Source: Klebsormidium nitens (lineage: Eukaryota; Plantae; Klebsormidiophyceae). Taken from it: a stretch of 64,000 nt of DNA. Position 1 is the stretch's first letter. Each line of letters opens with the position of its first letter. The notes beneath the pieces were generated by a model that was not told the DNA's origin, made no database searches, and saw only the letters and a list, made by a program, of their open reading frames with translations. The stretch spans positions 1 through 64,000 of the forward strand of contig DF237167.1 of the NCBI GenBank assembly GCA_000708835.1, written 5' to 3'. This document shows positions 29,877 to 63,926 of this stretch, one piece after another. Both the position numbers and the translations under genes were made by a program.

Positions 29877-32800
29877 CTATTGTGAAGGCGATGTCTTATT
29901 GGTGTCACGAGGCCTGATCTTAGTGCACAGATTGTGGATCACTACATCTACTGCTTGCGCCTCGTTCTCTCGCAGAGAAGTTGTGTATACGAACAGCCGT
30001 CTATGCTTCTGCAATGCAATTTGCTTACGCTTGATCTCACAGTCCCTAACACTCCGAAGGTAGGTGTACACGTCTATTAGAAAGTCTACTTCCACAAGGG
30101 CTACGCTTCTGTCTAGCTGCCACAAATCTAGATTAAAAGCATCCACCGGATCGTACATCCAGCTTGCATGCTTGACTTCGAAGAAGTAGCCTATGCTGTT
30201 GTAGTCCACATACTCTGCAAAGGGCAGTGCGTGAAAGGGGGAACCAATGAAGACGGGTATGCATCCCATCAAAACGACCTCAGTCAGACGGCGGCTGGCT
30301 TGAGTATCACCCGGCAATACCAAGCAAAACTTGCTGCGCCCTAGTTTGCTTAACATTTGAGAATGTTCGTCACGCCCCGGGCACTGCGAGCACTTGCACT
30401 TGACAGAGACGTCCGGAGCATCTATCGTACTAAAAGTCTGCACTGCCGCATGTCGCATACGCATGCCGACTGAGCGAATCTCGGAGTCACTGCAGCCTGC
30501 TCGAAAGAACAGTAAGGTGCTGCGCGGTCGCGAGTAGTCCGCCTTTGGTATGCGCTTTGTGCTCGCATAAGGGAGGATGAGGTCCCAGCGCCCCGAGCGA
30601 TCCCCGCCTCCGCAGATCTGGCCCCTCTCTGCACGAGATTTTGGCAACTTGGAAATGAGCTAAGCTTCACAACGCCTCGGAGAAACGGCTATGAACCAGA
30701 CAGGTCATCCTGGACGTCAGCTTCGAGAAAAGCTCTGCTGCAAAATGGCACCTGTCAAGTAAAACAGCGGAGTTTCGAGAACCATTTCGAGCAACAGCAT
30801 GATTTGTAAGGCTGTTGCCCATGAAGCTCTGCAAGTATAAGAAGATGGATGCCACCACGTATCACAGAACGGAAGATTAGCTGCTTCTACAAATCAGCCG
30901 AATCGTCCAACCACTGCCTGTTGAACTCAAGGATTGCATGCTCATTGCAGATCGTTTCGGAATCTCAAGTCCGACGAGCTTACCAGGACCCTTTTATGAG
31001 AAAGCGCCTGAACTCCGTTGTGATAAGATCCTTAAAGAACTTACTAGTTGTGCGGTCAAAGATGCACTTCATGCTGGACGGCCGTTTTAAAAAGCGGCTG
31101 CAATACAAGTGAACAAGTCGCAGATATCTAACTTTGTTGTTAGAAGCGACAGTCAAGCAGTCCATGTGTGATGCAGAACTGTCAACAGGCAATGAAGCCT
31201 TTCTCGCAACTTTGTCGACTTGCAATCAACTCACCAATAACGGCTGGAAAAATGGCGTTTGGCCACTCGCTGCAGACTAGAGGGCCAAAGATGTCCCCGC
31301 GACTGCTGTTGGGATCCGCGAGCAGGTATGCAAAGGCGCGGCCTTTGGTTTCGTTGTACTTTTGGAGATTGAGCACATGCTTTGCGGCTTTCTGGAGGAA
31401 GGGAGCAGTATCAACGTAGTCCAAGAATTCTTCTGGCCCTCCTTGCCGGACCTGCGATTGCCACCTGCATGAGACAAGACTCACATGGTAGGTCGACTGA
31501 GTGCTCACATATCTGATTAGAGCAGCAGAGTTGAGCCTGGTGAAACGCCACGCTTGTAAGGTCTTTGCGACAGCCTTGAATAAACACCTGTAGGAAACAG
31601 CTTCAAAGAAAAGGCATTTCAAGGAGCTGTCATCAAAAGCTTTCGGAATGCAGATTGCTAACAAAACGAAGGATTGAATGCACCGTTTCCTGAATTTCGT
31701 GTGGAGCTTTCGGAAGTTACGACCGAGGGACAAGCTAAGGCTGCATATCTTCCAGATGGTGCCTCCCTCTGTTACCTCCACTCAGAATTGCATTGCCTTT
31801 CTGGTTGTACTGATCCATACACTGCAAGCAAATCTGGAAGAGCTGGTATCTACCTGCTTCAAAGATACCGTATGGAAAAAGCATGAGTCCCTTTGGCTGT
31901 CAGTTCCAACTGTACCAAATAACAATTCCTACGATCTGGCAATCCTCCTTATCTTGAGCCTTCCTGACCAGACTGAACAAAAGAAGACCGTGAAGGTTGA
32001 ATAAGATCTTCAATTCTCACCAGGTCCAGTAGCAATAATCATTCACGATGACGACGTCAGCTTGGTCGATATCCTCAATGGAGTACTTGCTCTCTGCTAT
32101 TGCTTTTGTGATGTAAAAAGCTGCTGCATGCTGCCGGTGAAAGTGCTCTACCGGTCGATTATAACCATCCACGCTCCAACCCCATTGACCGTAAGGCCAG
32201 ACTGCTGGATCATTAGGATTACAAGTAGGAATCCCAACGGGTATTGCTAGTTCTTTCGAAACGTCCAGGACTTTGATCCGACAGCCTTGTAGATCTTTGG
32301 TCAGATCGTACGACAGCGAGTAGTTGGTTACGCCCGAGCCTTGAAAGGTGTCGACATTTTTGCAGACAACTAGCTCAGCAGAGCTGAACAAATAGATAAG
32401 GGGCTCAAGAAGGATGCTTGTACCACTACCTGCAGGACAGAATCCCTTGTTCAGTTTCTTCAGGTGGCTGTCCAAAAGCTGGATTACTGACCTTCTGGTG
32501 AGCTAGCTGGAGCTATACTGCGGCAGAATTGCAGGGGCCAAAATGAGATTAGACGAACAGTGCATTCAGGAGACAGTCATGCCTCGCAAGGCTTGGAGCT
32601 AGGTCTGGCAAGAGGTGCGCCAGACCAAGGTGACCTCCAAGAAACCTGACCTAGCTCATCGCAACCATTGACACCTCAGCTTCTCACCCAATTGCAAAAA
32701 GTACAAAACTCCTGGTCTTACCCATTTCAAAGTTTACCTCTTGATAATCCTTTTTGAACAAACCAAACTCATCAATCTCTTTGATAGACACCTACCAGCG

Positions 32801-33079
32801 ACTGCAACTTTCTTTCAAGCAGACTCAGATAGACTTCTGCATAGCAGAGGAGCATACTGGAGCTTGGTGCCCTTTGTTTGACGGATCCTTCAGCTAATTT
32901 GGAAGAGGCAGTACGGAAAACATGTCACTTGTCAAAAAACACACCTTCCCTCAATTGTTCCAAGATGGCTTACCGGGGAAATTGGTTAGCCCCAGGAGAA
33001 GAAGGAGCGCTAGCAATCCGTACTGCACCACCTTCCGACTCGCGGCCCTTTGCGCAAAGTGCAACGAGTATGCTTTCAT
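29877..33079 (-). CDS. Exostosin-family glycosyltransferase (GT47), type II membrane; exons 32974..33079, one uncertain exon near 32430-32510, 32021..32383, 31235..31464, 29877..30628
   Basis: N-terminal TM (YGLLALLLLLGL), SKYSIEDIDQADVVIVNDYCY, WDLILPY, RSTLLFFRAG, SKFCLVLPGDTQASRRLTEVVLMGCIPVFIG, LPFAEYVDY: typical exostosin-domain motifs. Confidence 0.9.
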
Positions 33080-33816: not shown

Positions 33817-34725
33817 TGACACCTTATTATAGTTTTAAGTGCCACCCGGTAATGACACAGTTTATTCGTCCCCTGATTGGCCAAAACCCTTACCGAAGAC
33901 TACGTTGACCAGCATTCAGTACAACCTTTGCAGTCCCCTCAACCTAGATCGAAACAACGTTATAATCTGCACCGTTCGATCCTCATCGACGGCTTACACT
34001 AGCCAATATTGAGGTTTTGACCTTACTCTACCTGATGCCGGCCGGTCTTCGCTCAGCCACATGAAGACGGCTTCAAGACCCAAAGAGGCAGTGTCGATAT
34101 ACGGTATAAGGATTCAACCAAACCCACAAACTCTTAACACCCCACCAAGGGTCTGAGCTTATTAACCTGCTGACCCAGCACCTTAACTCAGCTTGAAACC
34201 CATGTAAGGTGGCCATTCTCTTTTGACACCTTATTATAGTTCTAAGACGGTACGCCCCGGTAATGACACAGTTTATTCGTACCCTGATTGGCCAAAACCC
34301 TTACCGAAGACCACATTGACCAGAAATCAGTACAACCCTTGCAGTTCCTCAACCTAGATCGAAAAAACGTTAGAATCTGCACCGTTCGATCCTCAATCAA
34401 CGGCTTCAACTAGCCAATTTGAGGTTTCGACCTTCAAGTTACTCGTGAGTTTTTTTTTTGGAAAATACCGTCTTGCACGTGCGGCTCATCAGCTGGAACT
34501 CGCAGACTAGCGTGAAGTTACTCGTGAGTCGTAACTGATGCCGGCCGGTCTTCGCTCAACCACGTGAAGACCCAAAGAGGCAGTGTCAATATGTAATAAT
34601 CTATTCAAAACCACAAAGTTTTAACACCGCACCAAGCCGGTCTGAGCTTGTTAGAGGTTAACATTAACCTGCTGACCCAGCACCTTAACTCAGCTTGAAA
34701 CCCAAGTAAGGTGGCCATTCTCTTT
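33817..34725. repeat. Head-to-tail direct repeat, two copies of a ~407-bp unit (second copy carries an insertion)
   Basis: TGACACCTTATTATAG..GGTAATGACACAGTTTATTCGT..TAAGGTGGCCATTCTCTTT at 33817..34223 and again at 34224..34725, with scattered substitutions and indels. Confidence 0.9.
34436..34529 (-). mobile_element. Short poly(A)-tailed retroposed insertion (~64 bp) with a 15-bp target-site duplication
   Basis: AAGTTACTCGTGAGT at 34436..34450 and 34515..34529 flank a T10 run plus ~55 nt of unique sequence that is absent from repeat unit 1. Confidence 0.65.
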
Positions 34726-35886: not shown

Positions 35887-38800
35887 TTACCAGGCAATGC
35901 GCCTAGCCACCTGGGTCAAGACCTTCACCTCGAGCGAGCACCCGGGACTGAACCCGCTATCCACCGAATCCCCGGACTCGTATAAAGGGAGCCACTCCCG
36001 TATGTAAGTGCAGTACGCGCGCTTGATGCCCAACTCGCATAGGGTATTAACGACCTCCGTGTCGTCCCGGTACCGGAAGATGCAGTCGCCGGTCTTGAAA
36101 AACTCGGAGAAGTCGTGCGGCTTTGGCCCGTGGAAATGGACGATAAACGCAGTGTCCCGGTGCTCGTGGTAAGGCTTGGCGTTAAACGTCTGGGGCAGCT
36201 TGGTGTGCTTTACCTCCGTTTCGTAGAATTGGTTGTAGGCCCCCTGCGTACATAATACGAGCGGGTTTATCTCCAGCAGAGTCCCACTTTGCCGCTGCGC
36301 TTGCCGAGTAAATCTAGGATTTGTCAAAAGCTGGTGGCTTTATACAACCTTGATCACGGTCTGCAGATTCGAGGCTGCTGGATTGCCCGTTACGAAGGTT
36401 TGGCTGTACCAGTTTCTCGTACAACGGCCTACGACAAGTTTGGATGAGGTGGACGTACAGTTTCGACGACCGAACCCGGAGCTCGAATACGAGCCTGTGA
36501 TGACCGTTTGGTTCGATTCTCGAAAATGTTCAAATGGTGAAGCGAGCGCTGAAAGTTCGACGCCATTCAGTGAATTGGCTCTAGGTTGAAGGGTTCAAAA
36601 ATTTTCCGGGATAATCACGTTGCTCTAATGTACCCCGAGTTGTCAAGCGAGAGATCCGGGTTGGGAGCGACACGAATGTCGTGCAAACTTGATGCGTCAA
36701 GCCGCCAGGGTCCAGCTGGCAGTGTGGAAGGGAGGCCGGAATTCTGCTTCACTCATCATCCAACTTGGACCAGGGTAAAAGAATCTTCGTTTGTCATCAA
36801 AACAGGACAGATGCAGATACGCTCGATGATTGTGCTCACCTGATCCTGGGGCCCGTAGTTCGAGAAGAAGAGCCCGTTCTTGTTGCCCAGAACGAAGCTG
36901 AGGAACCGATCGTAAGTGACGCGTAGCCTTGGCAAGTTCATCAGCATGATCCCAGCGTTGTACGGGAAAACGTCTTTCGCTTCCGACGCCATCCCAATGG
37001 CCGGCGGCAATGGAAGGCCGAAGTCGGAGAGTCTCAGCGCGCGCCGGAAGTAGACGTCGGAGTCCTGAGGAGTGGGCGGAACGATGTCAGCGGAATGAAG
37101 CTTGCGGAACTGATTCATTAGTCTGTAGTTTTGCAGATGCGGTGCTTGGAGCGCCAGAATTAGGCTTCGGTCGAGAATGAAAGAATCCGGAGGCTTTCAG
37201 GGAAAAACTATTTGCGACTTCGTTTCGGCTACAATGTGCAAGCGCCACGGATTCGGTCACTTTCTTTGCGGGCCCAAGTCTCAGCTCGCGCCAGAAACCG
37301 ACGGCATGTATCAGCAAGCGAAGCCGACAGGCGGAATTGCGGAGCGGAAGGCCGGACCGCTTTCAAGCAGATTGCTTGAAGAGACTCGCGACAGGCCGAA
37401 ATACGGCGACCTTCGCCAGCGGCTGTCAGCTTCAGAGTCGAGGCCTCAGAGAAAGGCGCTCTGAAAGATGATCGATGATCGCACCATCCACGCAGACACT
37501 CATTCTGCCTGATCGATCGAAAGACGGTTTCGGTTGGTTCTTCTGGTGTCAACCGCTTATTCGCGCCTCAGAAAGGTCGTGATGAGTGGTCCGAAGTTTC
37601 GAAGTGGCCATGGTCAACATAGAGAAAACAGAAACCGGTTAGCTTGTCCCTTCACAAACGCCTTTTATGAAAGTCACCAGCTTTCTTGGGACCGAACCAA
37701 GACCGGAGAATCTTACCGTAAACAGTACGTATTCAAACTGCTCCAACTCCGGAACGATCGGGATGTCGATCCGCTGCCACGTGCCCACCGCCATTTCCGG
37801 GTTCGCGTACAAGTGCGACGTGCGCAAGTTCTCCTTTCCTAGGAGCCGCGCAATCTGCGTGGCCCACGAGGGGTTATGGTAGATGATCCGCACGTTCTGG
37901 GCGACCAGCCACTGGTGAATCTCCGCTGTGCGGTTGCCCGAAAAGAGGCAATACGGCGCCAGCGTGCCAAACCGAGCCGCGGACCGGACCGCAGCCTTGA
38001 GCATGTAGTCGTACTTTTGGCTCCATCCGTTATAGGTGAAGACCCAAGGAAGCCTGCAAGAGTGGAAATTTTCGATAAGAAAATGACGGCTTTGTTCGCT
38101 TTCTTTGCGTTGTCCTATTGAGTTTCCCATTACAATGGTTCTTGAAGTAAAAAGTCACAACAGGACATGCTCTAGTACGGACTCGGACGAGTGACCTTCG
38201 TGATGTAAGAACGTGAATTGGAAAGAGAGTACATGAATTTTATAGCAGCGTCACCGCGGCAAATGGAGCAGAGGGGAAGAGACACTGGCTACGCAGATCT
38301 CCCTGCATTGGCAGAAGGGTAAGAAGGTCTGCGAAAAAGGAAAAGCACCTGATGCGCCTGAGCTTTAGAAACGCGAACAAATTCAAAAGTGGATCGATCC
38401 AGCACCTATTTGAGTTGAGAATTGAGCAGGTCAGACGATTCATCAAACTGGCCCTACCGCTCCGCCTGATCTATCAGACTGTAGAAAACCGGAATTGAGC
38501 AACTCTTATCCGAGCAGATGAGTCTAGAATTTCCGTCGTCTTATGTCATACCTGAGCACGGGTATAAAGTCGTCGAGCGGGATGTTTCCGCCGTTGTACC
38601 AGCTCGCCCATTTTTCCGCCCGGGTCCGCTCGTAGATGAGCAGAGCGGAGAAGCTCGAGACGGAATTGCCCATGAATTTCTCGGACGCGAGGGCGATGTA
38701 GAAGTCGACCAGCGCGCTCTGTTCGCGCGAGAGAGGGACGGCCATCTCCGGCAGAATGTCCTCCTGAGTGTAAACCTGCACTCCCGAAAAGCGTCGTCAT

Positions 38801-41270
38801 TTGTACGAATTCTTGACCGCGGCCGCTTTCGTGCGTCATTTTGGCTCTGGAGCAACTCGGACAAAGCTTGTTAGATCAGTAGGTGGGTTAGGGGAAGATG
38901 GATCTCTAGCTGTTTCTCTGGTTCTGAATTGCTAGACATTGTTTCTGTGCAAATGATGGCGAATCTCCTAGGGAATCTAATCTCTCTTATCGGTTTTTAC
39001 TTTTCGACAACACACGCCTTGTCCGCACCACTTTGCGAAGGTACTCGCTTCGTTATCACGGAGTGGGCGTGCCAGTCTCTGACGTCTGACCCGTAAGAAC
39101 CTTGTAGTGACTTCACCAAGTTTCGCACGAGGCGAGGCGAACAAGTGTTTGCGAAAGCCAATCTCTCTGGTACGGTGGCAGGCCAATCTTTGAGAATTTT
39201 TAAGCACTATCTTCGAGATGCGCGATTCAAGAGCGATCCATCTTTTGTCGAACTTCGCATCCTTCCTGAATTTGTGAAGGAAGAATCATAAATTGCTCCG
39301 GCTTTGAACTGCCAGATGGGCCGGCAACTTTTCTTCCTTCTTCAAAACAGCTGTGAGAGTGCGACTTGCAGTCCAAGAAACAGGGTCGGGAAACTGACCT
39401 TGAATCCCGCCTTTTCCAGGTTGCTGAAGATAAGGTCGCGGTTTGTTGGGTCGATGTCGGACCACATACTGGCCACGTAGAGGGGTCGAGAAGGGGACAC
39501 GCGTTTCGCCAGCAGAGCCTCGTGCACCGTCCACGTGTTTGTGAGGCAGTTGTTACGGATCCGGCCGTCGGGGATGCTTTCCCAGCGCCGGCAATGTGCG
39601 AGCCAGTCGTTTTCGGCCCGCATGTGCAGAAAGGAGAAGCCAGCACCATCTGGAGGACAGGTTATTTTTATGCTTGGATTTGGCTCAGATTATACTGCTC
39701 GGAGAAACGACGCCAATACAACTTGGAGAATTTGACAAATCTAGCTCGGAGTAATTTCAATCGAGATGGTTTCAGCGTCCTACGTGCTCAAAAAAGGTTC
39801 ACATCCTCGTCCATGGGAGCTAGAGAGCGCACTTCAAACAGATCCGAGCTTTGCAATACTATTCAGCTGATGGACATGGTGAGATCGAAGAGTAACTGAA
39901 ATGCAAGCTTCTCAGACCACCAGCTGAATGCAGTGAGCAGGCCGCTAGATGCATAAGCCCCAGATGGCAAATGGGGAGGGCAAGCCCCCCCAATTTCATT
40001 AGACCAACCAGCTGAACTTTCTAGCAGGTTTAGAAGAGCATCCATTCTCGTTCCAGTTTATCAAACTCCAAAAACGAAAAAAAGAACCGTTTGTAGGCAG
40101 TCCCGATTCTTGGAATCTGAATGGAAAGCAGCTGAGCCAATTATCTTCCGTGCAGGGACCAAGCATGATTGGCTTTTGTAAGAAAACCTTTTGGAGTCCT
40201 TGTGGTCTTTGACAGGCAACATTCGGATATCTTTTGTTATGCAGGTGGGCTGCTTTCTGAGCTGCCATCTGCCCTAGATAAGCCGACCCAAAAAACCCAC
40301 AATTGCGGAGTGCAATCTGCAATTCCAGCTGCTCACCTCCGTCGCCCACAGGCTCAGCTCCATTGCGCCCCCCCTCAGCCAGTGTCGCTACTGCATGGGA
40401 CACGATCTCCTCGTACTGCTTTGCGGGCTGGAGGGATTCCAATACTGCCCAGAAGAGCTCCTCATTCTCTTTGATCACATCCCTTGACAGCCGCAGGAAC
40501 GCGCACTCGATCGCGACATGAAGATCGTGCTTCCTCTCCGTGCTCGCGACGGTGTCAGTGACGCCCTCAAACGAGACCTTCACGTACTCGCTTAGTGGGG
40601 GGGCCTCTGCCGGGGTCAAGACCTGCATTCCCAACCTGGAGGCAAGCCCGTTCCTAAACTCCTGAACATTGTAGACTTCTGACATTGGCACAGAGCCGTT
40701 GCTGATCGTATCCACAATCCAGGCATCGCTTCTCTGGAGGCCGTTCAAGAGGAAATCTGGCAGAACTGGGATCCTGTCCGTCAGCTTTGCAATCACGATC
40801 CCGTACACGAGAGCCAACCGCTGGTTGGCAAAGCCGTTACACGTGAGGAAGCGGAGCGTTCGAGACTCGATTGCGTGCTGGACATTGCGGGTAGGCACGG
40901 GCGGCAGCGTTCGTGCAGGGATGCTCCACTCGGGTGCGCTTTTCTCGACAGAGTCTAGGGCCCCCGCCAACAATTCCTTACTGTGCATGCTGCTGCTCAA
41001 GTGCCGGCTCGAACGCACTGCCGTCAGGGCCTCCCTTTCCCGATTTTGCAGTGACTGCGCGGTGCTCTGCTCAAAACCCCCCTGCAACGAAACCTTTTCC
41101 GAGCGCAACTGCACATTGATGACAAACAGCACGATTGCGGCGAGTCCGAGGACCTGATACGACGGGAGGAACGACCGGAAGAAGCGCCGCTGAAGCCGCC
41201 CCCTCACTTTTTCATTTCCAACCCAGCTCGCCATCGTTTCAATGACCGTGCTGCTACCTGCGTCCCCCAT
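35887..41270 (-). CDS. Fused O-fucosyltransferase-family (O-FucT, GT-B) plus GT8-like (GT-A) glycosyltransferase, ~775 aa, type II membrane; exons 40337..41270, 39399..39649, 38552..38775, 37717..38053, 36840..37064, 35887..36243
   Basis: TM VLGLAAIVLFVI. O-FucT motifs CNGFANQRLALVYGIVIAKLTDRIPVLP, FSFLHMRAENDW, LYVAS and SALVDFYIALASEKFMGNSVSSFS. No stop before the donor GTATGA at 38551, and the next exon joins in phase 2 (R|LPWVFTY). GT8-like motifs VLFT|DSDVYF, NAGIMLMNL, QDQ|GAYN and VHFHGPKP. Confidence 0.85.
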
Positions 41271-44200
41271 TCAACCCAGCGATCCCACAACCATTTGCAG
41301 TGGGGGCGGGGACTAGCATGCGGGGGAGGAGGGCGGATACAACTTAGACCCAGAGCTTGTGAGTTTGTCGGACCTGCAAAAGCCAGCAGCTAAGCTTGCA
41401 GCGGTGAGGTCAGGTTGGTTGCTTGCAAACACTTCTTTGAGTTTCTGATGACCCAGGCTGGGAAGCAGATTGAGGCACTCAGAGTCAGGGACACCCAGAC
41501 TGACCTGAAAAGGTACTTGGATCGCTGAATCCAATGATGCAGGAGGTAATAGCTCCTTCGCCCCTTCTGAGTACATGATTCCTACATCTATCTAGCTATA
41601 GCTCATTCTGCTGTTTCGCCTCGAGCTGCTGTAGTGACAACACACGGTTGTCGGCTCACTAAACCCTATAGTACCGGTGCCTTTATTTGTACAGAGCTGC
41701 AATGAGCCTGTGTGGCGACTCATGTTCAGGCGTCGTTGCGCAGCGGGTTACAGAAGTGCGGACGCTGATACGAATGAACGATTCTACCTCTTTTGTGGTA
41801 AAAACAATGATGCGAACTGTGAATTGACATCAATGCCATTGTACCTGAATACTGTCCTTGCATACCGCCCCCTGCTGTTGATGCGCACGCCAGGGCTTTA
41901 AGAGAGTTGTCCATTCTACGGTTCTCGATAAGGACCGTGCTACCCAGACTTGCTGTGATGCTGTGCAGAATCCATACTCGACGGTAGACACCCATTGCCG
42001 TAGCTCGGTACCAGTCCACATGGACGGTGCCTCGTGGAAGTTTGGGAAACCAACTTCCACTTTGACTTGGCCGCTTCACAGTCCTAACTTAGTACGTTTG
42101 CGCGGCTGGGCCACTTGTACTGGTAGGACCTACTGGTACTAGGTAGTCTAAGTACCAAATGCGCCGACACACCAGCCTACCTGGTATTGAAGCTGCAGAG
42201 GGAGTGCAGCACCAAGAGGCATGCGCGCGCGCATTGACCACCTTCTGCCCGCATGCACGCTGTCTAGGTACGCGCTGCCGTCCGGCGGCCGGCCGGTTAC
42301 AGCTTTCACAGCGCCAGCCTAGGAAATTTGTCCTGAAACCCACCGTGGCAAAGCAGCCGGGCGGGAAGCACCGAGGATGAAAATTGGGTCTGAATGTCGA
42401 CGACAGAGCTACCGGTCGAAGTCGGTTGATTGCCCCTGCTGTTGACAGGAACCGTAGAAACGACGGCGCCGCTCTTGAAAGGACCAAGTCTATACCGTGG
42501 TACTCGAGATCACAAAGCTGAGAGTCACACTCACAGAGGAGTCGACGCCACACCAGCTGCCGGCAGGTGGAAAGCTCGTAGTCTTCCAGGATTGCTAGGG
42601 CTTTCGAGCGTCTTGGTTGCATACTACTACTACTACTAGTAGCAAGGATCTTTGAAGCAGACACATCCTGTAGGGGCATTGACCGGACGTTGGGCAGCTT
42701 TGTCCAAAGGAGCTCAATGTATAACAGTCGTTAGAATCATGACGTAAGATGTATATTATACAACTTCAGAAAGAAAGCCAGCTTGAGCCAGTGAGCTGCG
42801 AGTAACACTTCATAATGTATATTCGTACCGTTCTAAAGTTCCATGCCACAGTCCGCGAGGCAATGAACACACTGCACTGAAAGACTGATTTGGAAAGTTC
42901 TGAACAGCGTATGTCGCTCTGCACAAAAATTCACACAACCATTCAGGCGCTATGGGTTTACTGGCTACTGCATACTACATCAGCAGGTCCTCTCCTATGC
43001 AGGGTGCACCCATTGTCCCAATGAGATCCTGAGATACAGCTGAGCTCAATGCCCCTGCGCACCTTATAGATCATTTTGGAGAGATGGAAGGATGAACCAA
43101 GCTCAGCAGAGTCGGTGCATCAAGCAAGTGCAAAAATGTGGCAGCCTTTCAAGGTGAGAGAGATTGCAGTTTCTGCAAGAGGCCTTTTAACTTTTTCTGC
43201 TTTCTCTCGATGCTGTTTCTCAACATGAGTATCTTTCCCAGAGAAAGTCTTCTGCGCAATGCGTTCTTTCAAGAAGGCGGGAAGCAGGGGTATTCAACTG
43301 CCGGTTGACGTGGGCATTCAACTGCTTTTGTCCAAGCTCGTTGCTTTGGATTCTGACAGCAAGCAGATTATTGTTAGATTTGGCGTGAATAGAAAGGTCT
43401 TCAGGTGTGCCACCACATCTTTGACGAGGCAGACAAGGGACACTTGTCACTCTCTAAGCTACACAACTCCAGGCCACCACTCTCATCAATAGACCACCAT
43501 AAATCTCAGCATTACATCTCAGCCGCTTGTCCTTGGCCCGAACAAGATGCTGGGGAGCTACCCCTTTTATAGAACTTCAGCCTGAGAAGGCGCGTTTGCA
43601 CATGACATGAACACCGGCAAGGTGTCCTTTGTAAATGCTTGTTGGGTCTTAAGAGCCTGAATTGCTGCCATATGTAATTGCCTGCAGCCTTTAGAAGCAC
43701 CTCGTTCGAGAGCACTGAAAGAGGCGAGGATGCAGATGGCCAACAAAGCAGTATCATGCTCTGAATCCATCTCTTCCTCTTCCATGCTCTAGTCCCGTGA
43801 TCAGCGGCAGCCTGGCAGGGGCTTTCCACATCCGCTGGCAGTTGCTGGCAAGTTCGTGGCATTCCGCACTGTACTTGTATGCTGCTGCCACGGGCCAGTC
43901 AAGGGGCGCGAAGTACGAGGCACCAGGTACTAGGTGAGGCAACATCACGAGCTCAGTCTAAGCATTTCGATGGAAAGCGAAGCAGAAGAACTGTGGCAGG
44001 AAGGTACATGGTTGACGGCAGGTATTCCCCTCTCAAAGCTGGACGGTCGGGCTCGGCTGTTTCTGTTTTCGCCTCTCGTCGTTGCCTTTCTTAACAGATA
44101 TGTTATTGTGTTGGCCGTTTTTGGTTTTGTGAATCAGCTTTCCCAGTTCCTCCATTTCGTCATCCTGCTTTCATGCATTCTACCACTTTTTCTTCTACTT

Positions 44201-44687: not shown

Positions 44688-45247
44688 GTCAGGACCGGCG
44701 CTCTACTTTTTGGTTATTCTTAGCTGGTCGATGAAATATCAAAATCGCCACGTGGCCGGCCATTCAAGTCGCTCAATGCTTGTATTTGACCTGAGGTATA
44801 GAAGGGGTTATCGTATCTTGGAAAGCGTTGCTGGTTGGCGTAAGTTGCTTTCAGGAAGCAGTGCGGGCTTCGAGTCCTTCTTCGTCCCTTCGGATCTCGG
44901 ATCTCCCAAAATGAACCATTACTCGCAAGATTTCCCGAGTCGCTTCACCTCTTTCGTAACTAGATCAAGCGAGTGCTTGATAAGCACGCCTGGAAAACGG
45001 AATCTGTTCGAAGATCGGCGTCCTTGTAGACTAATTTGAGTACTGTAGCATTCGAGGAAGCAGCAGAAAGCAGAGTCGCAACAAGCCTGACGAGCTTGCA
45101 GCCCGTCAGATTACTTTGCAGAACTTCAATGGTCGCCCGTTACATGCAAGCGCACCAATCTTCCGGCTGCATGGAACACTGAGCTTCTTTGCCCCCTGCA
45201 AATGTGCGATCTCGTGAAGATGAATTTATATCTGGCGGCCTTTGCAG

Positions 45248-50254: not shown

Positions 50255-51900
50255 TTATTGCCTTACCCTAATCAAAGTGAACTCGCTGCAATGGCCGCAG
50301 ATAGAGTTATCTTCTCTATTCACGATGGCATACCCTAAGTTTGCCAAGTGCGACATAAAGACTGCCAACTCGCTTAGGCTCACCATCCGCCCACTCCACA
50401 TGAGAGTCTTGGCCGCGGGATCCGGCGTCGTGCCCTCATACATACCGCCGTAGTGCAGCTCAAACGACACCTGTGCGGGCAACGGGTCGCTCTCCTGCCA
50501 CAGCGACATGACGTCATACTCGAACCCTTCAATGTCCATCTTCAGCAGGCTCACTTCCTCGATCTGATTGTCCTGCACCGCCTGTGCGAGCGTGATGAAC
50601 GCCGGGTCTTCCGCCGCCTTTTCCGGGCTCCCCAGACACTGCTTGTGGTAGTGGTGACGTGGGCCGCGGCTGGCGCCCGCGTACGTGCAGTCGAAGGTAT
50701 GCACCTCGCAGGGCGTGCTCGCGAGCATGGAGTCTTCAAAATCGAACTGGCCGTTGCTCCCAAGCGACAGGATCACGCACCCCTCCTTCAGCGCCTCAAC
50801 GCCGCAGAGCCACTTGCCGCCGTCGCCCTCGAGCCCCCACCGCTTGAGCGGCATTCCGGGGGGGCATCCGACGAAGGGGCGGAACAGGGAGAAACGGTCG
50901 TGGCCGGAAGGCTCTGTCGGCGTCCGGGGACACGTCTTTTCGTCGCACTCGGTGGTCGAACGGTACAGTGTTGCCATCCTCGGGAAGAGGCTGCCTTGCC
51001 AGCGGGAAAGGCTCTCGGATGCACGCTCCCAGTACGCCTCTTGCGCACACTGAGGCCCGCCTAGACCTCTGCGGCAGTCGAGCCCCGAAACCTGAGGAGA
51101 AACGAGGATAGGGTTTCAAGAAGTTGGAGAGGCCGTTTCGTTCTTGCGAAATACAGCTGTCTGGCAACGGCGAAGCTAGCCCAGCGTCCCGCATGGTGTC
51201 GTTTGGGATGAGATTGTGGCGCAAGTTCAGCTCCTGATTTTACGTCTGATAGTCGAACGGTGTGGGAAGAAAGCGCTTGGTGATAAAGTTTGGGGCTTGA
51301 TGAATTGGCTGTGCGATGGCGTTTCCAATGCTTATCAACTCAAAAGTGTTAACACGTCCAGATAACACAGTAGCCGAATAACTTAGCCAAGCTGGTTAGC
51401 AGGAGAGCTAGTATGAATTGGTCCACACTGTCTTGCCTTGTCTGTCAGCATCGGTTCTTGATGTCAAAACGTTCAAAGGTAAACTTGCTAATAGTCATTT
51501 CGATCCAGTGTGCAAAACTCTTGCATCTTTGTACGGACGGGTTCTGAATCAATCGCTTCCATCTCAGAAACCTGCAACACTTATGGCCATCGAAACCAAC
51601 GGAATATGCATCTCCTTTGGCTGTCTAAAGCTTACTTAAGAAAGCAGAAAAATGAGAAGGTGAAGATCATATAGCTCGGAAGTTGTGACTTCTGGCACAC
51701 CTTCTTGATGAAGCAAAGCTGCAGAAACTTACCTGCAGCTTCTCATCCCGGATAGCCACGCCCCGACCGGTGCGGGCAGGAACAAGGAAGACGACAATCA
51801 GCACACTGGTCGCGACAGAGAGAAACAGAATGCGGATGTCTTTGCTGATCCAGTCCTTGGCCACCGCCGCGACATCTCTTGGAGACTGTGTGGACTTCAT
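50255..51900 (-). CDS. Methyltransf_22 / FkbM-like SAM-dependent methyltransferase, ~334 aa, type II membrane; exons 51733..51900, 50255..51091
   Basis: TM ILFLSVATSVLIVVFLVPA; motifs GDGGKWLCG, CVILSLGSNGQFDFE, CEVHTFD, LLKMDIEGFEY and QVSFELH; phase-0 intron GTAAGT..CTCAG. Confidence 0.88.
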
Positions 51901-54492: not shown

Positions 54493-56317
54493 ATGGCAGC
54501 CGGCACGCCACTCTTGTTCGACGGAAGGGGCAAAGGAATCGCCACCAGGGCGGCTTGGCTGTTGTTGATGCTGTTATTTTTCTTCACAGCATTACTCGCG
54601 GGGCACCTCTGGTGGGAACAAGACGGCTCCTTTGAATCGGTCATTAGCAGAATGGTACCCTGGCAGTCTAGTTTTTCCACCCTTGCGTCGAGCTTGCGCA
54701 GCAATCCTGGCGGCCAGCAAAACTCGTTTCCGGCATTGCAAGCTGAATTGGGTAAAGGTAATGACACGTCCAGTGAAAGTGAGCGTGTGAACGCATCAAT
54801 TTCCAACCAGGACCTGATATTTGAGCCGGCTGGTAGCTGGGTAAAAAATACGAGCGCGACTGGTGAAGTAAAGTTTGCTTACTACAGCAGCCCAGGATCC
54901 AATTCCTTGGCTGGTGGCCCGAAAGAATTCTCCAGGGAAGCAGCGCACAAGCTTCTTGGTGGCAAATGGGTGTACTTTTGGGGAGACTCTACAATGAGGC
55001 AGGTTTTCACCGCGTTTCAGAACGGCATCCAGGGCTCTGAGCTCTCCTTTGAGGTGAGCACATCCTCATGGTAATGTGCTTGCAAGTTCCGTTCCTGAAA
55101 GGGGCCACATGCAGGTTTTCAGGGAACTACAGCTTTTGAAACTTTTGGCTTGGTTTCTGGGATTTTGCAGAAGTGGTCGCTAGTACAGGAAAGCTATTAG
55201 GACCTCGCACAGTGTGCTTCTGAATCCGTCAAAACTGGGGACACTCTTACGTGAGCACTCGATCAGTGGGGGCAAACCATGCCTGTGAGACTAAAGCACT
55301 AGTAGACGGCCTTCACAGACCCACTGATTGAAAGCAGGCTGAAACTTCAATACGAACGAGAAGGGATAGACTCATGAGCTAAACTGGGACACTTACATAA
55401 ATGGGTGCCTGATCCTAAGTAAAGAGCGTTCTGTCACTCTGATCAAGCTCTTCACGATTCTTTCAGCAAGCTCACAGCAACGCAGCGCAAGCTTTCCCTA
55501 CGCTTTTTTTCAGCTCTTCCGAGCTTCATGAAGTCAACGGGGTCGGTTCTGCGCGCAGGCCTCCTGATCTACAAAAGCCTGAGGTGCTCAGAACCTTGCT
55601 CCGGCAGCCACACTCCGCGCAGTTTTTAAGCTGCGTCCAAGTTCTGACGGTTCGCTTGTTGGACGCTTTTTTCAGGAGTCCAAGTCCAAGTTCCGGTCGT
55701 CGAGTCCCCAGGAGGGCCGCAAACCGTACACGCCGCTGCCCCATGACGACACCCCCTGTTGGATCAACGAACACGTGGAGCACGAGGATTTGCTGCTGCC
55801 CCACTCCGGGCAGGCTGTCAACCTGACATACGGCTGGAAGCACTTTCTCTTCGAGGAATACGACGTCACCTTTCTGCAAACCCAACTTCCGAACCTGCGC
55901 GCTGGCAGGCTCCCTGACGTCATCGTCATCTCATCGGGGCTTCACAACTGTTACCACTTCAAAGACGCCCGGGCGTGGGAGGATCAGCGCGATCTGGACG
56001 CGTTTCTCACTGAGCTAGACCGCGTCCCGTACGCTTTGCCGCCCATAGTCTGGCTTGACAACGTCATCTTTGACAAGCCGGCTCCGGAAACCGGCTACCC
56101 GGAAGCATGCCGGCGCTTCAACGAGTATTACCGGGCGCGGATCCGAGCTCGAGTGCTGAGCGGGGACCGCCGGGACTCTCTTGTCAGTCGAGAGCAGATC
56201 ACGTGGACAGCGCCGTCAGAGCTGTGGGGAGACCAGTTGAGGCTCCACCTGGCAGCTGACGTGTACACCGTTGTTGCTGGGTTTGTGCTACAAGCTATGG
56301 AAGCTTTGCGGATATAG
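54493..56317 (+). CDS. SGNH/GDS-motif protein, PC-esterase/TBL-like (putative polysaccharide O-acyltransferase or esterase), ~400 aa, type II membrane; exons 54493..55053, 55676..56317
   Basis: TM WLLLMLLFFFTALLAGHLW; motifs GKWVYFWGDSTMRQVF (GDS), PDVIVISSGLHN and a C-terminal GDQLRLH (atypical Asp-His spacing); phase-0 intron GTGAGC..TTCAG. Confidence 0.75.
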
Positions 56318-58483: not shown

Positions 58484-61137
58484 CTAGACAAGAGTGACTC
58501 CTCTTTCAGAATCTTGGCAACTCCTGACAGCTCTCGTCACATTACTCCCGCGAGCAAAGTTGAAGTCTTCAACGGAAAGCCTGAGAGGGCCACACGCGAC
58601 TGCTTGCGGCGGAAAATGGTAACACGGCTCAGCAGTCGCGCTCTCTACACAGCCCATCTCGGAAGTTGCAGAGTCGTGGTCGATTAGCCACGCGCGCGAG
58701 TCCCCAATGGCGCGCGCTATGTACCCGAACGTCGAACCCCGGGTAATCATGAGCGTATCAGCATATCCCAACAACCATACGTCGGCGAGAGCTTTTTGGT
58801 CGTGGCTACGCGTGTTCGTCTGCTGCGACCCCTCGTGCGACACCGTATATATGTCCACGTGTCGAGTTTCTAGGCTAGCATTATAGGCTTCTTGCAAATC
58901 TTTGACAATCGTTTCGGAGAGCAGTGAAGCGACCATCACCCTCCCGTAATCCGGGCGTTCGTTCGCGTCTTTGGTCGAGTTGGTTGCGCGGTCTTCTAGA
59001 GACACCCTGCGAAGTGAGAACGAAGTTGTCGGGTCAGTATTGTCAATGGGGTTCTCGATTTGCTTTCAGAGATTTGCAGATTTGGAAGCCAGAACCCTGT
59101 CTCTCACAGAGGCCACGTTGGAGTCCCAACAGAGGCCACGTGGAGTCCAAATGCTGGAATAAAGCCGACATGCATGCTGATAAACTTCTGCATCAATACA
59201 ACGTTTGTTTCTTCTGGATACATGACATTCGAAGGCACTATAAAGGCACTGCCTGTCACCCAACCTTGAAACCCACAGATCTCGAAGCCTCTACAAGTAT
59301 CATTAGAGAGTACTGCAAAACTTTGCTGGCAATCTTACGTGGGTGTACCCACCTTACGTGTACATACAGACTCAACGAACACAGCTACAAAAAAATCCAT
59401 GACAATCATTTGATCACTAACCAGATTTCTACTCTTCCAGATAGTCCCGTTCAGCAATCAAGAAAAACTCCGCCGATCCTTCTGGTGCATTAGACAGTGG
59501 AGGGCCCTTTCGAAGAAAGGAGGCACTTATCGTCACAATTGGGGACGTTTGGCAACAACTTTGCCGGAGAACAATTCGTCCGTTTACCTGGGAAGCATGC
59601 CTGTTGTGTAGCCACAGCTGAGGAGGCTCTGCAGATGGACCGGTCCATACGCTCCCGATCCAAAAATGTTTCCAAATCGACTCTGGATTGCTGCAAAAGA
59701 AAACCATTCGCCAGAATGAACGGTCCGCGCGCAATATGTAAGTACTCCCCAGGTTTTGGTTTACGACTCGGCTACTCAACAAAAATGCTAACATTCACGA
59801 ACGAGGGGCGGTGCCTTGCTAGCTGGATTTGGCAGCAAGAAGTCGTGAGCGTAGTGGACATTATCTATCCCTCTCGTCGTCCTGAGATGGTCGTCATTCG
59901 TCCAGTTCCCAGTCAATTTCGGCCCAAATTTTCTTTGCTAGCTAGCGATGCCCACATTCTTGGCTAACTTTGGCAGCGACTTACACTCCACTCCAAAGCA
60001 ATGCATAGCAAGAAAGAGCATACCCATATCTCGGCCTTACTTACCTGTCCGAGCACCGGGCTTGGACATCTTCTCCGCATGCGCCGTTTTGACGAGCTCC
60101 CAAACGCTGTCGGCTGGATTTACAAATCGCCGCAGAAGCACCCGTGCTGGCCGATTATCCGGAAACAGTGTCTGCAGAAGTGGCTGGAACCGCCGCTGGG
60201 AATACAGTGAGGGAAGCCAGTACTGGTTGCCGCTCACCGCAACAAATTCCGACTCTTCTAGTTCCCAGGTCGCCTCCTCACAGAAGGTCAGAGACGGGTT
60301 CTTCCAAAAATCAAGGATGGCCACGCTTGCATTGCCAAGAGTGGCGCGGCCGATGCCGTTTGGCCCGTCTGCAAAGTTCTTCAATACCAGGTTGGGGTCA
60401 AGCCGCCACTCCGAGCCGGGAAAGGGCTGACAAAGGAGCTCGTATGACAAGGCCCCCGGCGCCTGAACAACCAGCACTCTTGCCGTCAGCATAGCGTACA
60501 GAAGCGCGCTCGTCAGTGCGAGGAGCTGGTTGCCTAGCCCAGAACAGTTGCACAGCTCGGCAACGATCAGAAACTTGCACGGCGCCGCCCGTCCACCGGC
60601 AGCCGTGAGCTCGCTAAGATTCCCTGCTGCTTGGGTGCATCTCGTATGGAATCCCTCATATGCTTCCGCCAGCCTCTTGAAGGCAGGCGATCCGCTCCCA
60701 AGCGGGGACCATGGCTGGTAAGCTGAGTGCTCCACTCTGTATGAGCATTTAGGATCCTCTAGTCCGCCAGACGCGCTTTTCACAGGTGTTCCCAGACCGA
60801 CGTCCAGCCGCGCTAGAAGCTCAAGTAAGGCTGGCTCGTCCGTTTCTAGTTGCTGTGGGAGATCCTCGCGCTCAGTCCCGTGGGTTGGAAAATGGCAGGC
60901 AGGCAGGGGGGATCCCGTTGCATTCTCGCCGAAGGCGCCACAGTGTGCAGGGCACGCAGTGCGCTGCTGGTTTGCACCTGACAGTAGAAAGGTGAACGCT
61001 AGAAAGACGATGACAAGGACGGGTACCATCAAGATCATGTGCTGCGACTGTCGTTTTGACCAGGACGGCAGGTGCTTCAGACTTGCAGCCCGCAACTCGC
61101 CCGACCGTGTGGGGCTGAGGAGCTGTGAGGGGTCCAT
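58484..61137 (-). CDS. FUT: GT37 xyloglucan/AGP alpha-1,2-fucosyltransferase-like protein, ~572 aa, type II membrane; exons 60045..61137, 59588..59690, 58484..59006
   Basis: TM MILMVPVLVIVFLAFTFLL; motifs SGLGNQLLALTSALLYAMLTARVLVV, SGNQYW, SHEGSQQT, KALADVWLL..DTLMITRGSTFGYIA and EPCYHFPP match plant FUT (GT37) motifs; splice phases 1 and 2 are consistent. Confidence 0.92.
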
Positions 61138-63184: not shown

Positions 63185-63926
63185 TCATGCAGTCGATGGG
63201 TGCCACATGTCCAATCTTTCCAACCCCTTCCTCTTCTCTTCGGAGCCAGCCAGGTAATTAGCGTGGACCCAAAACATTTTGCCTTTATTCTTACTGAACC
63301 ACTCCTCCTTCATTCCGTACGCCCCACTGGGGAACCGAACCCTCGGCAGAAGCTGCACCGCAACCCCCCTGCCCGCCAAGATCTCCGGCGAGTTCGTCAC
63401 TTTGTTAAGGCTGACTTGGTCGTTCCCGTGGACCCTGCCGTTCTCCGTCTGGTTGTGTATCGCTTCTATCCACGTGTCGACGAATGTAATCCCGACCTGC
63501 GTAGGTTTCACGTGCATGAAACACGTGCACACATTCAGGCCCACAGTGTCCTTCCCGAGCTGCCGGGAGCCCTCCATGTCGCCCTCGGTGCTCGAGCCGT
63601 CGTCCGTCACGCTGACGTCATATGCTGAGGTCAGGATCTGGTGCGGGTCGCGCAGCCAGACGGTGTCGATGTCGCTGTAAATGACACTGAAGCCCATTCC
63701 GAGCAGGTCGCGCATGTGGTACGCGCGCAGCACCGTGAGGTCGTTGAAGGACTGCGAGCCAAAGGCGGCGAAGTCGTCGGAGAATTTGTCGGACTGCGCC
63801 TCGGATTGGAGGAGAATCGCATGGCCTGGCCAGTGCGCTTCCACGAAGTCGAACGTGGGCTGATCGATAGTGAATGCGATGACGCGGCTCGCCAAACCCA
63901 GGCGTTCCAGGCTCCCGACCCAGTTG
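63185..63926 (-). CDS. Nucleotide-diphospho-sugar transferase (GT77, RRA/RGXT-like), last exon; 5' part lies beyond the window
   Basis: LGMGFSVIYSDIDTVWLRDP (DxD), GNDQVSLN, LLPRVRFPSG and VHANYLAGSEEKRKGLERLDMW; acceptor TTTCGTGCAG at 63927. Confidence 0.88.

What the first reader, a model, noticed from the sequence alone, without database searches (positions are those of the whole stretch)
29877..63926. Candidate eukaryotic glycan biosynthetic gene cluster: six unrelated glycan-tailoring enzymes in ~34 kb
Seen: every intact gene from 29.9 kb to the window end encodes a glycan-modifying enzyme from a different family (GT47, O-FucT+GT8 fusion, Methyltransf_22, GDS/SGNH PC-esterase-like, GT37, GT77). 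The five with a visible N-terminus all carry a single TM signal-anchor. No housekeeping gene intervenes; only a decayed expansin-HRGP gene and fragments lie between them. Known: these families build and decorate cell-wall polysaccharides and hydroxyproline-rich glycoproteins in the Golgi, and in land plants they are normally dispersed, with clusters being tandem paralogues. Inference: the set (sugar transfer, two fucosylation folds, methylation, acylation) resembles the logic of a bacterial capsule/O-antigen locus. It may be a pathway for one fucosylated, methylated, acylated wall or mucilage glycan or glycoprotein, possibly with the Pro/Thr-rich secreted proteins nearby as substrates. The cluster probably continues past 64 kb.
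Basis: partly seen in the sequence, partly recalled or inferred. Interest (0 to 1): 0.82.

Follow-up and report, generated by a model that had tools for sequence, protein, structure and literature searches.

The report
Golgi sugar-enzyme gene cluster in Klebsormidium
In the alga Klebsormidium nitens, six unrelated genes for enzymes that build or decorate secreted sugars lie side by side, far more often than chance allows; whether they make one shared product is still untested.

Summary
The window is Klebsormidium nitens scaffold DF237167.1, positions 1-64000. The run of genes is real.

From 29.9 kb onward the genes are:
- GT47
- one spliced 775-codon gene joining an O-FucT-like domain to a GT8-like domain
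- Methyltransf_22
- a divergent SGNH-fold protein
- GT37
- a DUF7810+GT77 gene that runs on to 70.7 kb

Five show a membrane anchor. Between them lies only a frame-broken expansin-like, Pro/Thr-rich ORF set.

Under random gene order such a run is expected about 1e-6 to 3e-4 times per genome, unless at least 8-10% of genes belong to this class. The genes are not recent paralogues, and nothing points to a viral origin.

Functional coupling is unproven. Only the fusion-GT47 adjacency recurs in a relative. The methyltransferase and SGNH neighbours differ elsewhere. I could test expression for one gene only.

Scan notes flag three similar candidate clusters on other scaffolds of this genome. They also flag a SAM synthetase, GoSAMT-like transporter and methyltransferase paralogue further along this scaffold.

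Verdict: a real, non-random cluster, with about 45% odds that it is one pathway.

The parts
29877..33079 (-). GT47 (exostosin) gene. Coding pieces lie at about 32277-32023, 31469-31206 and 30629-29877. An inferred first exon starts at the ATG at 33079 and carries a signal anchor.
   Evidence: The last exon matches PF03016 at 79.4 bits against a cut-off of 33.4. The exons were placed by tblastn with the GT47 of relative L002, at 28-53% identity. The anchor exon was read from the translation and is inferred only.
35887..41270 (-). Fusion gene of 775 codons: membrane anchor, O-FucT-like domain (exons 1-3), GT8-like GT-A domain (exons 4-6). Exons: 41270-40337, 39649-39397, 38773-38551, 38052-37716, 37063-36839, 36242-35887.
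   Evidence: RNA contigs give five spliced joints and one open frame. PF10250 hits exon 1 (E 0.014, profile 6-68) and exon 3 (E 5e-5, profile 284-324). Relatives carry PF10250. The GT8 label rests on the language-model match. The same exon order occurs in relatives L001 and L002.
41505..41717 (-). Alternative 5' exon of the fusion gene. It is spliced over 41504-41109, which removes the ATG at 41270 and the membrane anchor.
   Evidence: One RNA contig leaves the genome at 41111. Its loose end maps to 41508-41537. After sliding 3 nt the intron has GT..AG ends, and the in-frame start gives a short N-terminus without an anchor.
45183..47828 (+). Expansin-like ORF pieces followed by a Pro/Thr/Ser-rich repeat tail. 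The frame is broken at least twice, near 45955 and near 46870-46900. It is a possible pseudogene, or a wall-protein gene with assembly errors.
   Evidence: Read from the translations. One frame break lies at a G run. The repeats are family D1/D4. There is no Pfam or PDB support for 'expansin'.
50255..51900 (-). Methyltransf_22 (FkbM-like) methyltransferase gene with an N-terminal membrane anchor. The likely exons are 51900-51733 and 51091-50255.
   Evidence: It matches PF13383 at 72.5 bits. The annotated gene starts at 51900. The upstream exon is conserved in L003 and L006.
54493..56317 (+). Divergent SGNH-fold (GDSL/NXPE-like) protein gene with membrane anchor and GDS motif. The likely exons are 54493-55053 and 55676-56317, about 400 codons.
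   Evidence: It has a weak NXPE4_C hit and a language-model match to the SGNH clan. It has only 7 relatives, and relative P0133 passes the Lipase_GDSL_2 cut-off. Both exons are conserved in L007. The public model of 233 aa starts at 54994.
58484..61137 (-). GT37 fucosyltransferase gene of 572 aa (GAQ85034.1) with a membrane anchor. Three coding blocks lie at about 61137-60013, 59691-59539 and 59026-58487.
   Evidence: PF03254 matches two exons. The sequence is 100% identical to P0127, named 'fucosyltransferase [Klebsormidium nitens]'. tblastn gives the blocks.
63185..64000 (-). Last exon of the DUF7810 + GT77 gene (1013 aa). The gene continues to 70731 on the scaffold, beyond the window.
   Evidence: It matches PF03407 at 115.5 bits. 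The annotated gene carries PF25102 and PF03407. DUF7810 was found on four exon ORFs of L005.

Best explanation
This is a genuine, lineage-specific physical cluster of Golgi-type glycan-tailoring genes in Klebsormidium nitens. It contains six unrelated enzymes (eight catalytic-type domains), each with a single N-terminal anchor where the start is visible.

My preferred reading is that at least a core of them works as one co-regulated module in the Golgi lumen. In that reading:
- The transferases (GT47, O-FucT-like/GT8-like, GT37, DUF7810/GT77) add sugars to a secreted acceptor. The acceptor would be a Hyp/Ser/Thr-rich wall glycoprotein or a pectin- or arabinogalactan-like polymer.
- The Methyltransf_22 enzyme O-methylates a sugar.
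- The SGNH-fold protein adds or removes an acyl group.

Shown: the gene identities (with the caveats given), their contiguity, the splicing and expression of the fusion gene, and non-randomness under random gene order.

Inferred: Golgi location, a shared acceptor, co-regulation, and every activity.

The cluster looks young and fluid. It appears to have been assembled by relocation and duplication, since the methyltransferase has an 81% identical copy 49 kb away. It was not inherited as a block.
For: - Family and structure evidence.
- Annotation: no other annotated gene lies between 48.5 and 71 kb, and at most one lies in the 41.3-48.5 kb gap.
- Chance: the expected number of runs of six in 17,207 genes is 1e-6 at a class share of 2%, 2.7e-4 at 5% and 0.017 at 10%. 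One shuffled genome in 1,000 at 5% reaches 6 of 7. For scale, 18 wall-related GT families hold 288 of about 27,400 Arabidopsis genes and 130 Marchantia genes.
- No recent paralogy among the members.
- In relative L002 the fusion gene again has a GT47 as next neighbour.
- In relative L007 the SGNH gene again sits next to a glycosyltransferase, this time a GT90.
- Methylation theme on the same scaffold: a SAM synthetase and a second Methyltransf_22 gene, and by a scan note a GoSAMT-like transporter (not checked by me).
- GT77, GT47 and methylated Hyp-linked glycans are known together in green algae (PMC5371791).
Against: - No co-expression data. I could lay reads on one gene only.
- An earlier follow-up on the neighbouring SAM synthetase, transporter and methyltransferase trio reported no joint response in one RNA-seq set.
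- The methyltransferase of a more distant relative (70% identical to both K. nitens copies) has LEA_5 and unrelated neighbours within 10 kb either side.
- The SGNH orthologue in L007 has no methyltransferase within 5 kb upstream.
- The fusion orthologue in L001 has no cluster gene within 9.8 kb upstream or 5.7 kb downstream, though a LINE-like ORF lies there.
- The GT47 in L002 is only about 44% identical and is inverted, so it may be a paralogue.
- No shared promoter motif was found.
- No precursor-supply gene or exporter lies inside the window.
Confidence: 0.45

Rival explanations
1. Neutral neighbourhood. The genes are real Golgi enzymes, but they serve different pathways. They lie together because lineage-restricted, fast-evolving secretory-pathway genes pile up in the same permissive stretches of this genome, through relocation and duplication. 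There is no selection for linkage.
For: - Several members are very lineage-restricted. The SGNH protein has 7 relatives, the O-FucT ORF has 6 and GT37 exon 1 has 2.
- Neighbour sets differ between relatives.
- Scan notes report several look-alike 'glycan clusters' on other scaffolds of the same genome. That fits a regional bias as well as it fits function.
- The earlier follow-up found no joint regulation next door.
Against: - The flanks hold conserved housekeeping genes: an EH-domain gene and a SAM synthetase. This is therefore not a plain young-gene compartment.
- I saw no transposon ORF inside the cluster. Six different folds in a row still needs a strong regional bias, which nobody has measured.
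Confidence: 0.35
2. Two or three small independent modules that happen to abut, not one pathway. Candidates are the divergent methyltransferase/SGNH pair, the GT37 + GT77 pair and the fusion + GT47 pair.
For: - Only the fusion + GT47 pair recurs in a relative.
- The methyltransferase and SGNH genes are head-to-head, 2.6 kb apart.
- A 9-kb gap with a broken ORF set separates the two halves.
Against: The abutment of three such pairs itself needs explaining, and the chance estimate is no better. The methyltransferase/SGNH pairing is absent in L007.
Confidence: 0.1
3. Pure chance in a genome where these families are greatly expanded.
For: I found no published per-family count for K. nitens. The class share is therefore bounded, not measured.
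Against: It would need a class share of about 10% of all genes. That is many times the share in Arabidopsis or Marchantia.
Confidence: 0.06
4. A foreign island, meaning an endogenised giant-virus segment or a block acquired by horizontal transfer.
For: - Giant viruses carry glycosyltransferase sets.
- The language-model search listed a few viral GT-A clusters low in the ranking.
- A giant-virus contig holds a distant methyltransferase relative.
Against: - The genes have spliceosomal introns.
- G+C content matches the flanks.
- The closest relatives are green algae and plants.
- Viral matches are only 30-47% identical over short stretches.
Confidence: 0.03

Closest known systems
Fungal galactosaminogalactan (GAG) five-gene cluster of Aspergillus (uge3, sph3, ega3, agd3, gtb3; PMC4817252)
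   Same: It is a eukaryotic cluster of unrelated, physically adjacent genes that build and modify one secreted glycan, including a tailoring esterase-type step.
   Different: The GAG genes are shown to be co-regulated, are conserved across fungi and include a precursor epimerase. None of that is shown here. The enzyme families here are different Golgi type-II enzymes, and the linkage is poorly conserved.
Plant and algal metabolic gene clusters and conserved gene neighbourhoods (plantiSMASH-type clusters; green-algal neighbourhoods, PMC7826186)
   Same: These are non-homologous enzyme genes brought together recently by duplication and relocation. They are lineage-specific and often lack deep synteny.
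   Different: Those clusters make small molecules. The algal survey that included K. nitens does not mention glycosyl or cell-wall terms in its main text. I found no Golgi glycan cluster described.
Bacterial capsule / O-antigen loci
   Same: One locus combines several transferase families with methyl and acyl tailoring.
   Different: There is no operon, no nucleotide-sugar synthesis genes, no initiating transferase, no flippase or polymerase and no exporter in the window. The genes lie on both strands with their own introns.
Hydroxyproline O-arabinosylation machinery (GT77 RRA/XEG113 with GT47 ExAD) and methylated Hyp-glycans of Chlamydomonas (PMC5371791)
   Same: GT77 and GT47 act in sequence on Pro-rich wall proteins. 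The algal side chains can be methylated, and K. nitens (as K. flaccidum) has Hyp-Ara4.
   Different: Orthology of these two genes to RRA, XEG113 or ExAD was not tested. In plants those genes are dispersed. GT37, the O-FucT-like/GT8-like fusion and the SGNH protein are not part of that pathway.
Pectin side-chain enzymes (GT77 RGXT, GT8 GAUT, O-FucT-fold GT106 rhamnosyltransferases, GT47 ARAD/XGD1, TBL acetyltransferases)
   Same: Every family in the cluster has a member with a pectin role, and rhamnogalacturonan II carries 2-O-methyl-fucose and acetyl groups. This rests on my own knowledge and on the supplement text.
   Different: No orthology was shown. This is a resemblance recalled from knowledge of the families, not a test.

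Membership tests
GT47 / Exostosin (PF03016) | Profile match above the curated cut-off | tested here: met
   The last exon scores 79.4 bits against a cut-off of 33.4. The L002 relative is annotated PF03016.
O-FucT (PF10250) | Profile match above the curated cut-off across the domain | tested here: inconclusive
   The domain is split by introns. Exon 1 scores 15.5 bits (profile 6-68) and exon 3 scores 23.5 bits (profile 284-324), against a cut-off of 31.5. Volvox and Chlamydomonas relatives at E 2e-25 and 5e-19 carry PF10250. The joined protein was not searched.
GT8 (PF01501) | Profile match or GT-A fold with a DxD motif | tested here: inconclusive
   There is no Pfam or PDB hit on exons 4-6. 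The language-model search gives 41 of 100 best named clusters as PF01501, score 0.93. The fold of exon 4 alone has pLDDT 53 with a beta-alpha-beta pattern and was not searched. The DxD-like and H-x-G-x-K-P motifs were read by eye only.
Methyltransf_22 (PF13383) | Profile match above the curated cut-off | tested here: met
   It scores 72.5 bits against a cut-off of 22.4. 163 relatives were found, and the listed ones carry PF13383.
PC-esterase (PF13839) | Profile match to PF13839 | tested here: not met
   PF13839 was never hit. It appears only at rank 64 of the language-model list, score 0.86.
SGNH hydrolase clan (GDSL-type) | GDS block plus a profile match to a clan member | tested here: inconclusive
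   The GDS motif is present. NXPE4_C scores 19.9 bits, below its cut-off. The distant relative P0133 (E 7e-6) passes Lipase_GDSL_2 at 40.5 bits against 32.9. The protein itself never passes a cut-off.
GT37 / XG_FTase (PF03254) | Profile match above the curated cut-off | tested here: met
   Two exons score 97.3 and 72.1 bits against a cut-off of 23.4. The public name is 'fucosyltransferase'.
GT77 / Nucleotid_trans (PF03407) | Profile match above the curated cut-off | tested here: met
   It scores 115.5 bits against a cut-off of 22. The annotated product carries PF25102 and PF03407.
Expansin | Profile or solved-structure sequence match to the DPBB and CBM63 domains | tested here: not met
   There is no Pfam hit at E up to 10 and no PDB hit. 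The label rests on motifs read by eye.
Eukaryotic biosynthetic gene cluster | Three or more non-homologous enzyme genes adjacent beyond chance | tested here: met
   Six genes lie in a row with no recent paralogy. Chance is bounded.
Eukaryotic biosynthetic gene cluster | Co-expression of the members | not tested
   The reads tool allowed one stretch only. The fusion gene is transcribed and spliced in four runs of one study.
Eukaryotic biosynthetic gene cluster | Members act in one pathway on one product | not testable with these tools
   This needs biochemistry or genetics.
Eukaryotic biosynthetic gene cluster | Linkage conserved in relatives | tested here: inconclusive
   Fusion + GT47 is kept in L002. 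The methyltransferase (L004, L006), SGNH (L007) and fusion (L001) flanks are not shared within the DNA held. Most contigs are short.
Bacterial capsule / O-antigen type locus | Precursor synthesis genes, an initiating transferase and an export or polymerisation system in the locus | tested here: not met
   None of these is among the genes at 29.9-71 kb.

The most novel reading that the evidence does not exclude
Klebsormidium nitens keeps its Golgi glycan-tailoring genes in several operon-like clusters of unrelated enzymes. This one, together with the SAM synthetase, the GoSAMT-like transporter and the second methyltransferase further along the same 137-kb scaffold, would be a complete supply-and-decoration unit for one fucosylated, methylated, acylated wall glycan or Pro-rich glycoprotein. 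That would be the first polysaccharide- or glycoprotein-glycan gene clusters described in the plant lineage, and a shortcut for assigning functions to orphan plant families such as Methyltransf_22, DUF7810 and O-FucT-like proteins.
Probability: 0.25. Interest if true: 0.85.

Novelty: new variant of a known kind. Interest (0 to 1): 0.55.

Why it matters
Most plant wall glycosyltransferases, methyltransferases and acyl-tailoring proteins have no assigned substrate, because their genes are scattered and redundant. A streptophyte alga at the base of the land-plant lineage that keeps unrelated Golgi enzymes of one pathway side by side would allow guilt-by-association, as in bacteria. The neighbours would name the partners, the order of steps and perhaps the acceptor.

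It would also show that selection can assemble glycan pathways into clusters in the green lineage, as it does for fungal exopolysaccharide and plant specialised metabolism.

If the neighbourhood proves functionally unrelated, it is still a useful warning. Runs of same-theme genes in this genome, of which the scan has flagged several, would then not be evidence of pathways.

Tried and rejected
- Metagenome scans: the GT37 protein found no relative. A GT47 alignment found only a distant hit and a GC-rich chlorophyte-like contig with no other cluster gene.
- PDB sequence searches of the three GT8-like exons found nothing meaningful.
- Folding exon 4 alone with three sequences gave pLDDT 53. I did not search with such a model.
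- The 'expansin' label got no Pfam or PDB support.
- The 'remorin-like' reading of the ORF at 28342-28566, made by eye, got no Pfam hit, so I dropped it.
- Published per-family GT counts for K. nitens were not found in main texts or held supplements. I therefore bounded chance instead of measuring it.
- Shared promoter elements: there is no repeat of 30 nt or more between upstream regions. One 8-mer occurs in four of five promoters against 0.07 expected, which I do not count as evidence.
- Tandem duplication as the origin is rejected. Only a 27-residue fucosyltransferase motif links GT37 and the O-FucT-like exon.
- Viral origin: only distant methyltransferase relatives occur in viral contigs.
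- There are no Rfam families in the window.
- No paper mentions kfl00218 gene identifiers or a function for PF13383.
- ORFs flanking the relatives' genes (L001, L004, L006, L007) mostly gave no family, and two look non-coding.
Full report
**Identity of the DNA.** The first exon ORF of the GT37 gene is 100% identical to GAQ85034.1, 'fucosyltransferase [Klebsormidium nitens]'. That gene lies at 58484-61137 of scaffold DF237167.1 (GCA_000708835.1, 137,273 bp), the same numbers as in the window. Window coordinates therefore equal scaffold coordinates 1-64000. G+C is even at about 0.5 across the window, apart from the Pro/Thr-rich stretch at 46-48 kb.

**The genes, left to right.**

1. GT47, minus strand, 29877 to about 33079.
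   - The last exon passes PF03016.
   - Two further coding pieces align to the GT47 of a relative.
   - An upstream exon with a hydrophobic anchor is inferred from the translation.

2. A six-exon gene, minus strand, 35887-41270.
   - RNA contigs from four runs of one study, identical to the genome, give five GT..AG introns.
   - The exon chain is one 775-codon frame.
   - Exons 1-3 are O-FucT-like. They get sub-threshold PF10250 hits at the two ends of the profile, and they have Volvox and Chlamydomonas relatives that carry PF10250.
   - Exons 4-6 have no profile or PDB hit.
   - Exon 4 is 88-92% conserved in two relatives.
   - The language-model search puts exon 4 among GT8 clusters.
   - A fold of exon 4 alone was too uncertain to use.
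   - The fusion is therefore shown, the O-FucT label is well supported, and the GT8 label is probable but not proven.

3. Methyltransf_22, minus strand, 50255-51900.
   - It passes its cut-off.
   - An anchor-bearing first exon is conserved in relatives.

4. An SGNH-fold gene, plus strand, 54493-56317.
   - It has an anchor and a GDS motif and a weak NXPE4_C hit.
   - The language-model search places it in the SGNH clan.
   - The exhaustive search found only seven relatives. One of them passes Lipase_GDSL_2.
   - PF13839 (PC-esterase) was never hit.
   - Both exons are conserved in a relative.
   - The best splice model gives about 400 codons.
   - The public 233-aa model starts at 54994, just after the GDS motif, and so probably lacks the anchor and the catalytic serine block.

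5. GT37, minus strand, 58484-61137.

6. GT77, minus strand, from 63185. It belongs to a 1013-aa gene with an N-terminal DUF7810 domain that ends at 70731.

**What lies between and beside.**
- To the left are an EH-domain gene reaching 24286 and unidentified ORFs at 26-28.6 kb.
- Between 48.5 and 71 kb the public annotation has only the four genes named above.
- GT37 is GAQ85034 and the methyltransferase paralogue KFL_002180150 is GAQ85040.
- If tags run by tens, GT37 is the ninth gene of the scaffold. That leaves room for at most one annotated gene in the 41.3-48.5 kb gap.
- That gap holds expansin-like ORF pieces and a Pro/Thr/Ser-rich repeat tail with at least two frame breaks.
- One break sits at a run of G, so an assembly error cannot be excluded.
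- No profile confirmed 'expansin'.
- A codon-usage scan found no other strong coding stretch in the gaps.

**Chance.**
- I could not obtain the real family counts for K. nitens, so I bounded the problem.
- I used 17,207 genes (PMC6566377).
- A run of six is expected 1e-6 times at a class share of 2%, 2.7e-4 times at 5% and 0.017 times at 10%.
- Six of seven is expected 1.8e-3 times at 5%.
- For scale, the 18 wall-related GT families hold 288 Arabidopsis and 130 Marchantia genes, about 1% of genes or less.
- The run is therefore not chance under random gene order.
- It is not a tandem array either. The only similarity among members is a 27-residue fucosyltransferase motif shared by GT37 and the O-FucT-like exon.
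- Introns, composition, green-lineage relatives and only remote viral matches argue against a foreign island.

**Conservation.** Relatives came from Logan assemblies and one JGI metagenome.
- In L002 (SRR23617307) the fusion gene is colinear exon by exon. Its next gene, 2.7 kb away, is a GT47.
  - That GT47 is inverted relative to K. nitens and only about 44% identical.
  - GT47 genes are a small share of any genome, so this adjacency is more likely inherited than accidental. Orthology remains uncertain.
- In L001 (metagenome) the fusion gene has no cluster gene within 9.8 kb upstream or 5.7 kb downstream. A LINE-like ORF lies downstream.
- The methyltransferase of L006 (SRR23617307) is 90% identical to the window copy and 80% to the paralogue. 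The duplication therefore predates that split. The 4.8 kb held downstream shares nothing with the window.
- The methyltransferase of L004 is about 70% identical to both copies. It sits among LEA_5 genes, with no cluster gene within 10 kb either side.
- The SGNH orthologue in L007/L008 (76% identical) has a GT90 fragment upstream, not the methyltransferase.
- The GT37 relative lies on a 3.8-kb contig that shows no neighbour.
- Overall, one adjacency of about five examined is kept at family level. In one other case the neighbour is again a glycosyltransferase, but of another family.

**Expression.** The fusion gene is transcribed and spliced in four runs of one 2024 study. It is nearly absent from Logan contigs of the other listed runs with the same species label. 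These are contigs, so levels cannot be compared.

**Beyond the window.**
- The GT77 gene ends at 70.7 kb.
- Two annotated genes follow before a SAM synthetase at about 90-91 kb.
- After that come a 277-aa unknown, the Methyltransf_22 paralogue (81% identical, 99.9-103.1 kb), a Kelch-like gene, a 195-aa unknown and a GDSL lipase.
- A scan note (s1-316235) says a GoSAMT-type transporter sits head-to-head with the SAM synthetase. Its follow-up judged that trio an ordinary neighbourhood without joint regulation. I could not reach that DNA.
- The scan also holds three other 'glycan cluster' notes on other scaffolds of this genome. These are leads, not evidence.

**Reading.**
- The physical cluster is real and non-random.
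- I put the odds at about 45% that at least a core of it is one co-regulated Golgi module decorating one class of secreted glycan or Pro-rich glycoprotein.
- I put about 35% on a neutral regional pile-up of lineage-restricted Golgi genes.
- The remainder I split between several abutting small modules, chance and a foreign origin.
- The families fit two known chemistries equally well:
  - Hyp-linked arabinosides with methylated ends, using GT77 and GT47 (PMC5371791).
  - Pectin or arabinogalactan side chains with fucose, methyl and acetyl groups.
- Nothing here discriminates between them.

**Comparison with the known.**
- The nearest described systems are the co-regulated five-gene galactosaminogalactan cluster of Aspergillus (PMC4817252) and plant or algal metabolic clusters.
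- A survey of conserved gene neighbourhoods in green algae that included K. nitens does not mention glycosyl or cell-wall terms in its main text (PMC7826186).
- No paper names these scaffold-218 genes.
- The genes themselves are in public databases.

**Limits.**
- Exons were joined solely inside local scripts, to count codons and stops and to rank splice sites. No joined sequence went to a search or fold tool.

Noticed in passing
window 41109-41717 (-): One RNA contig splices an upstream exon (from 41505 upward) onto 41108. This skips the ATG at 41270 and the membrane anchor of the fusion gene. Two other contigs run unspliced through the anchor. There may therefore be an anchored and an anchor-less isoform, or the skipped stretch may be a 5' UTR intron.
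   Followed up: partly
window 54493-55053 (+): The public gene model of the SGNH-fold protein (233 aa, start 54994) begins just after the GDS motif. The upstream part, with the membrane anchor and the GDS motif, is conserved at 55-81% in a relative (L007). The annotation is therefore probably truncated.
   Followed up: partly
window 33845-34725: Repeats of about 410-500 nt period, 92-98% alike, lie in the intergenic DNA between the GT47 gene and the fusion gene.
   Followed up: no
L003:10001-13217 (scaffold 99920-103136): A second Methyltransf_22 gene, 81% identical, lies 49 kb from the cluster copy on the same scaffold. The relative in SRR23617307 is 90% identical to the cluster copy and 80% to the other. 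A more distant relative (L004) is about 70% identical to both. The duplication therefore happened within the Klebsormidium lineage.
   Followed up: partly
L005:407-7953 (scaffold 63185-70731): The GT77 gene carries an N-terminal DUF7810 domain. One exon of that domain shows a G-x-G-N type motif like those of GT37 and O-FucT proteins (read by eye). If so, the gene would be a second fucosyltransferase-like plus GT-A fusion in the same cluster. No sequence similarity to the first fusion was detectable.
   Followed up: partly
L007:1394-1726: In a relative (SRR14092358) the gene upstream of the SGNH orthologue is a GT90 glycosyltransferase fragment (PF05686, 53 bits). This is a different glycan enzyme in the place where K. 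nitens has the methyltransferase.
   Followed up: partly
L001:17972-19852: A 626-aa ORF with weak endonuclease/reverse-transcriptase-type hits (LINE-like) lies downstream of the fusion gene orthologue in the metagenome contig. It may have pushed any former neighbour away.
   Followed up: no
window 45955-45958: The frame break inside the expansin-like second domain falls at a run of four G. The assembly used 454 reads (PMC4052687), so this could be a sequencing error and not gene decay.
   Followed up: no
window 48484-50254 (-): The annotated methyltransferase gene range extends more than 1.7 kb past the stop codon of the conserved ORF. The public 370-aa model therefore either has a long 3' UTR or ends in different exons from the model supported by relatives.
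   Followed up: no
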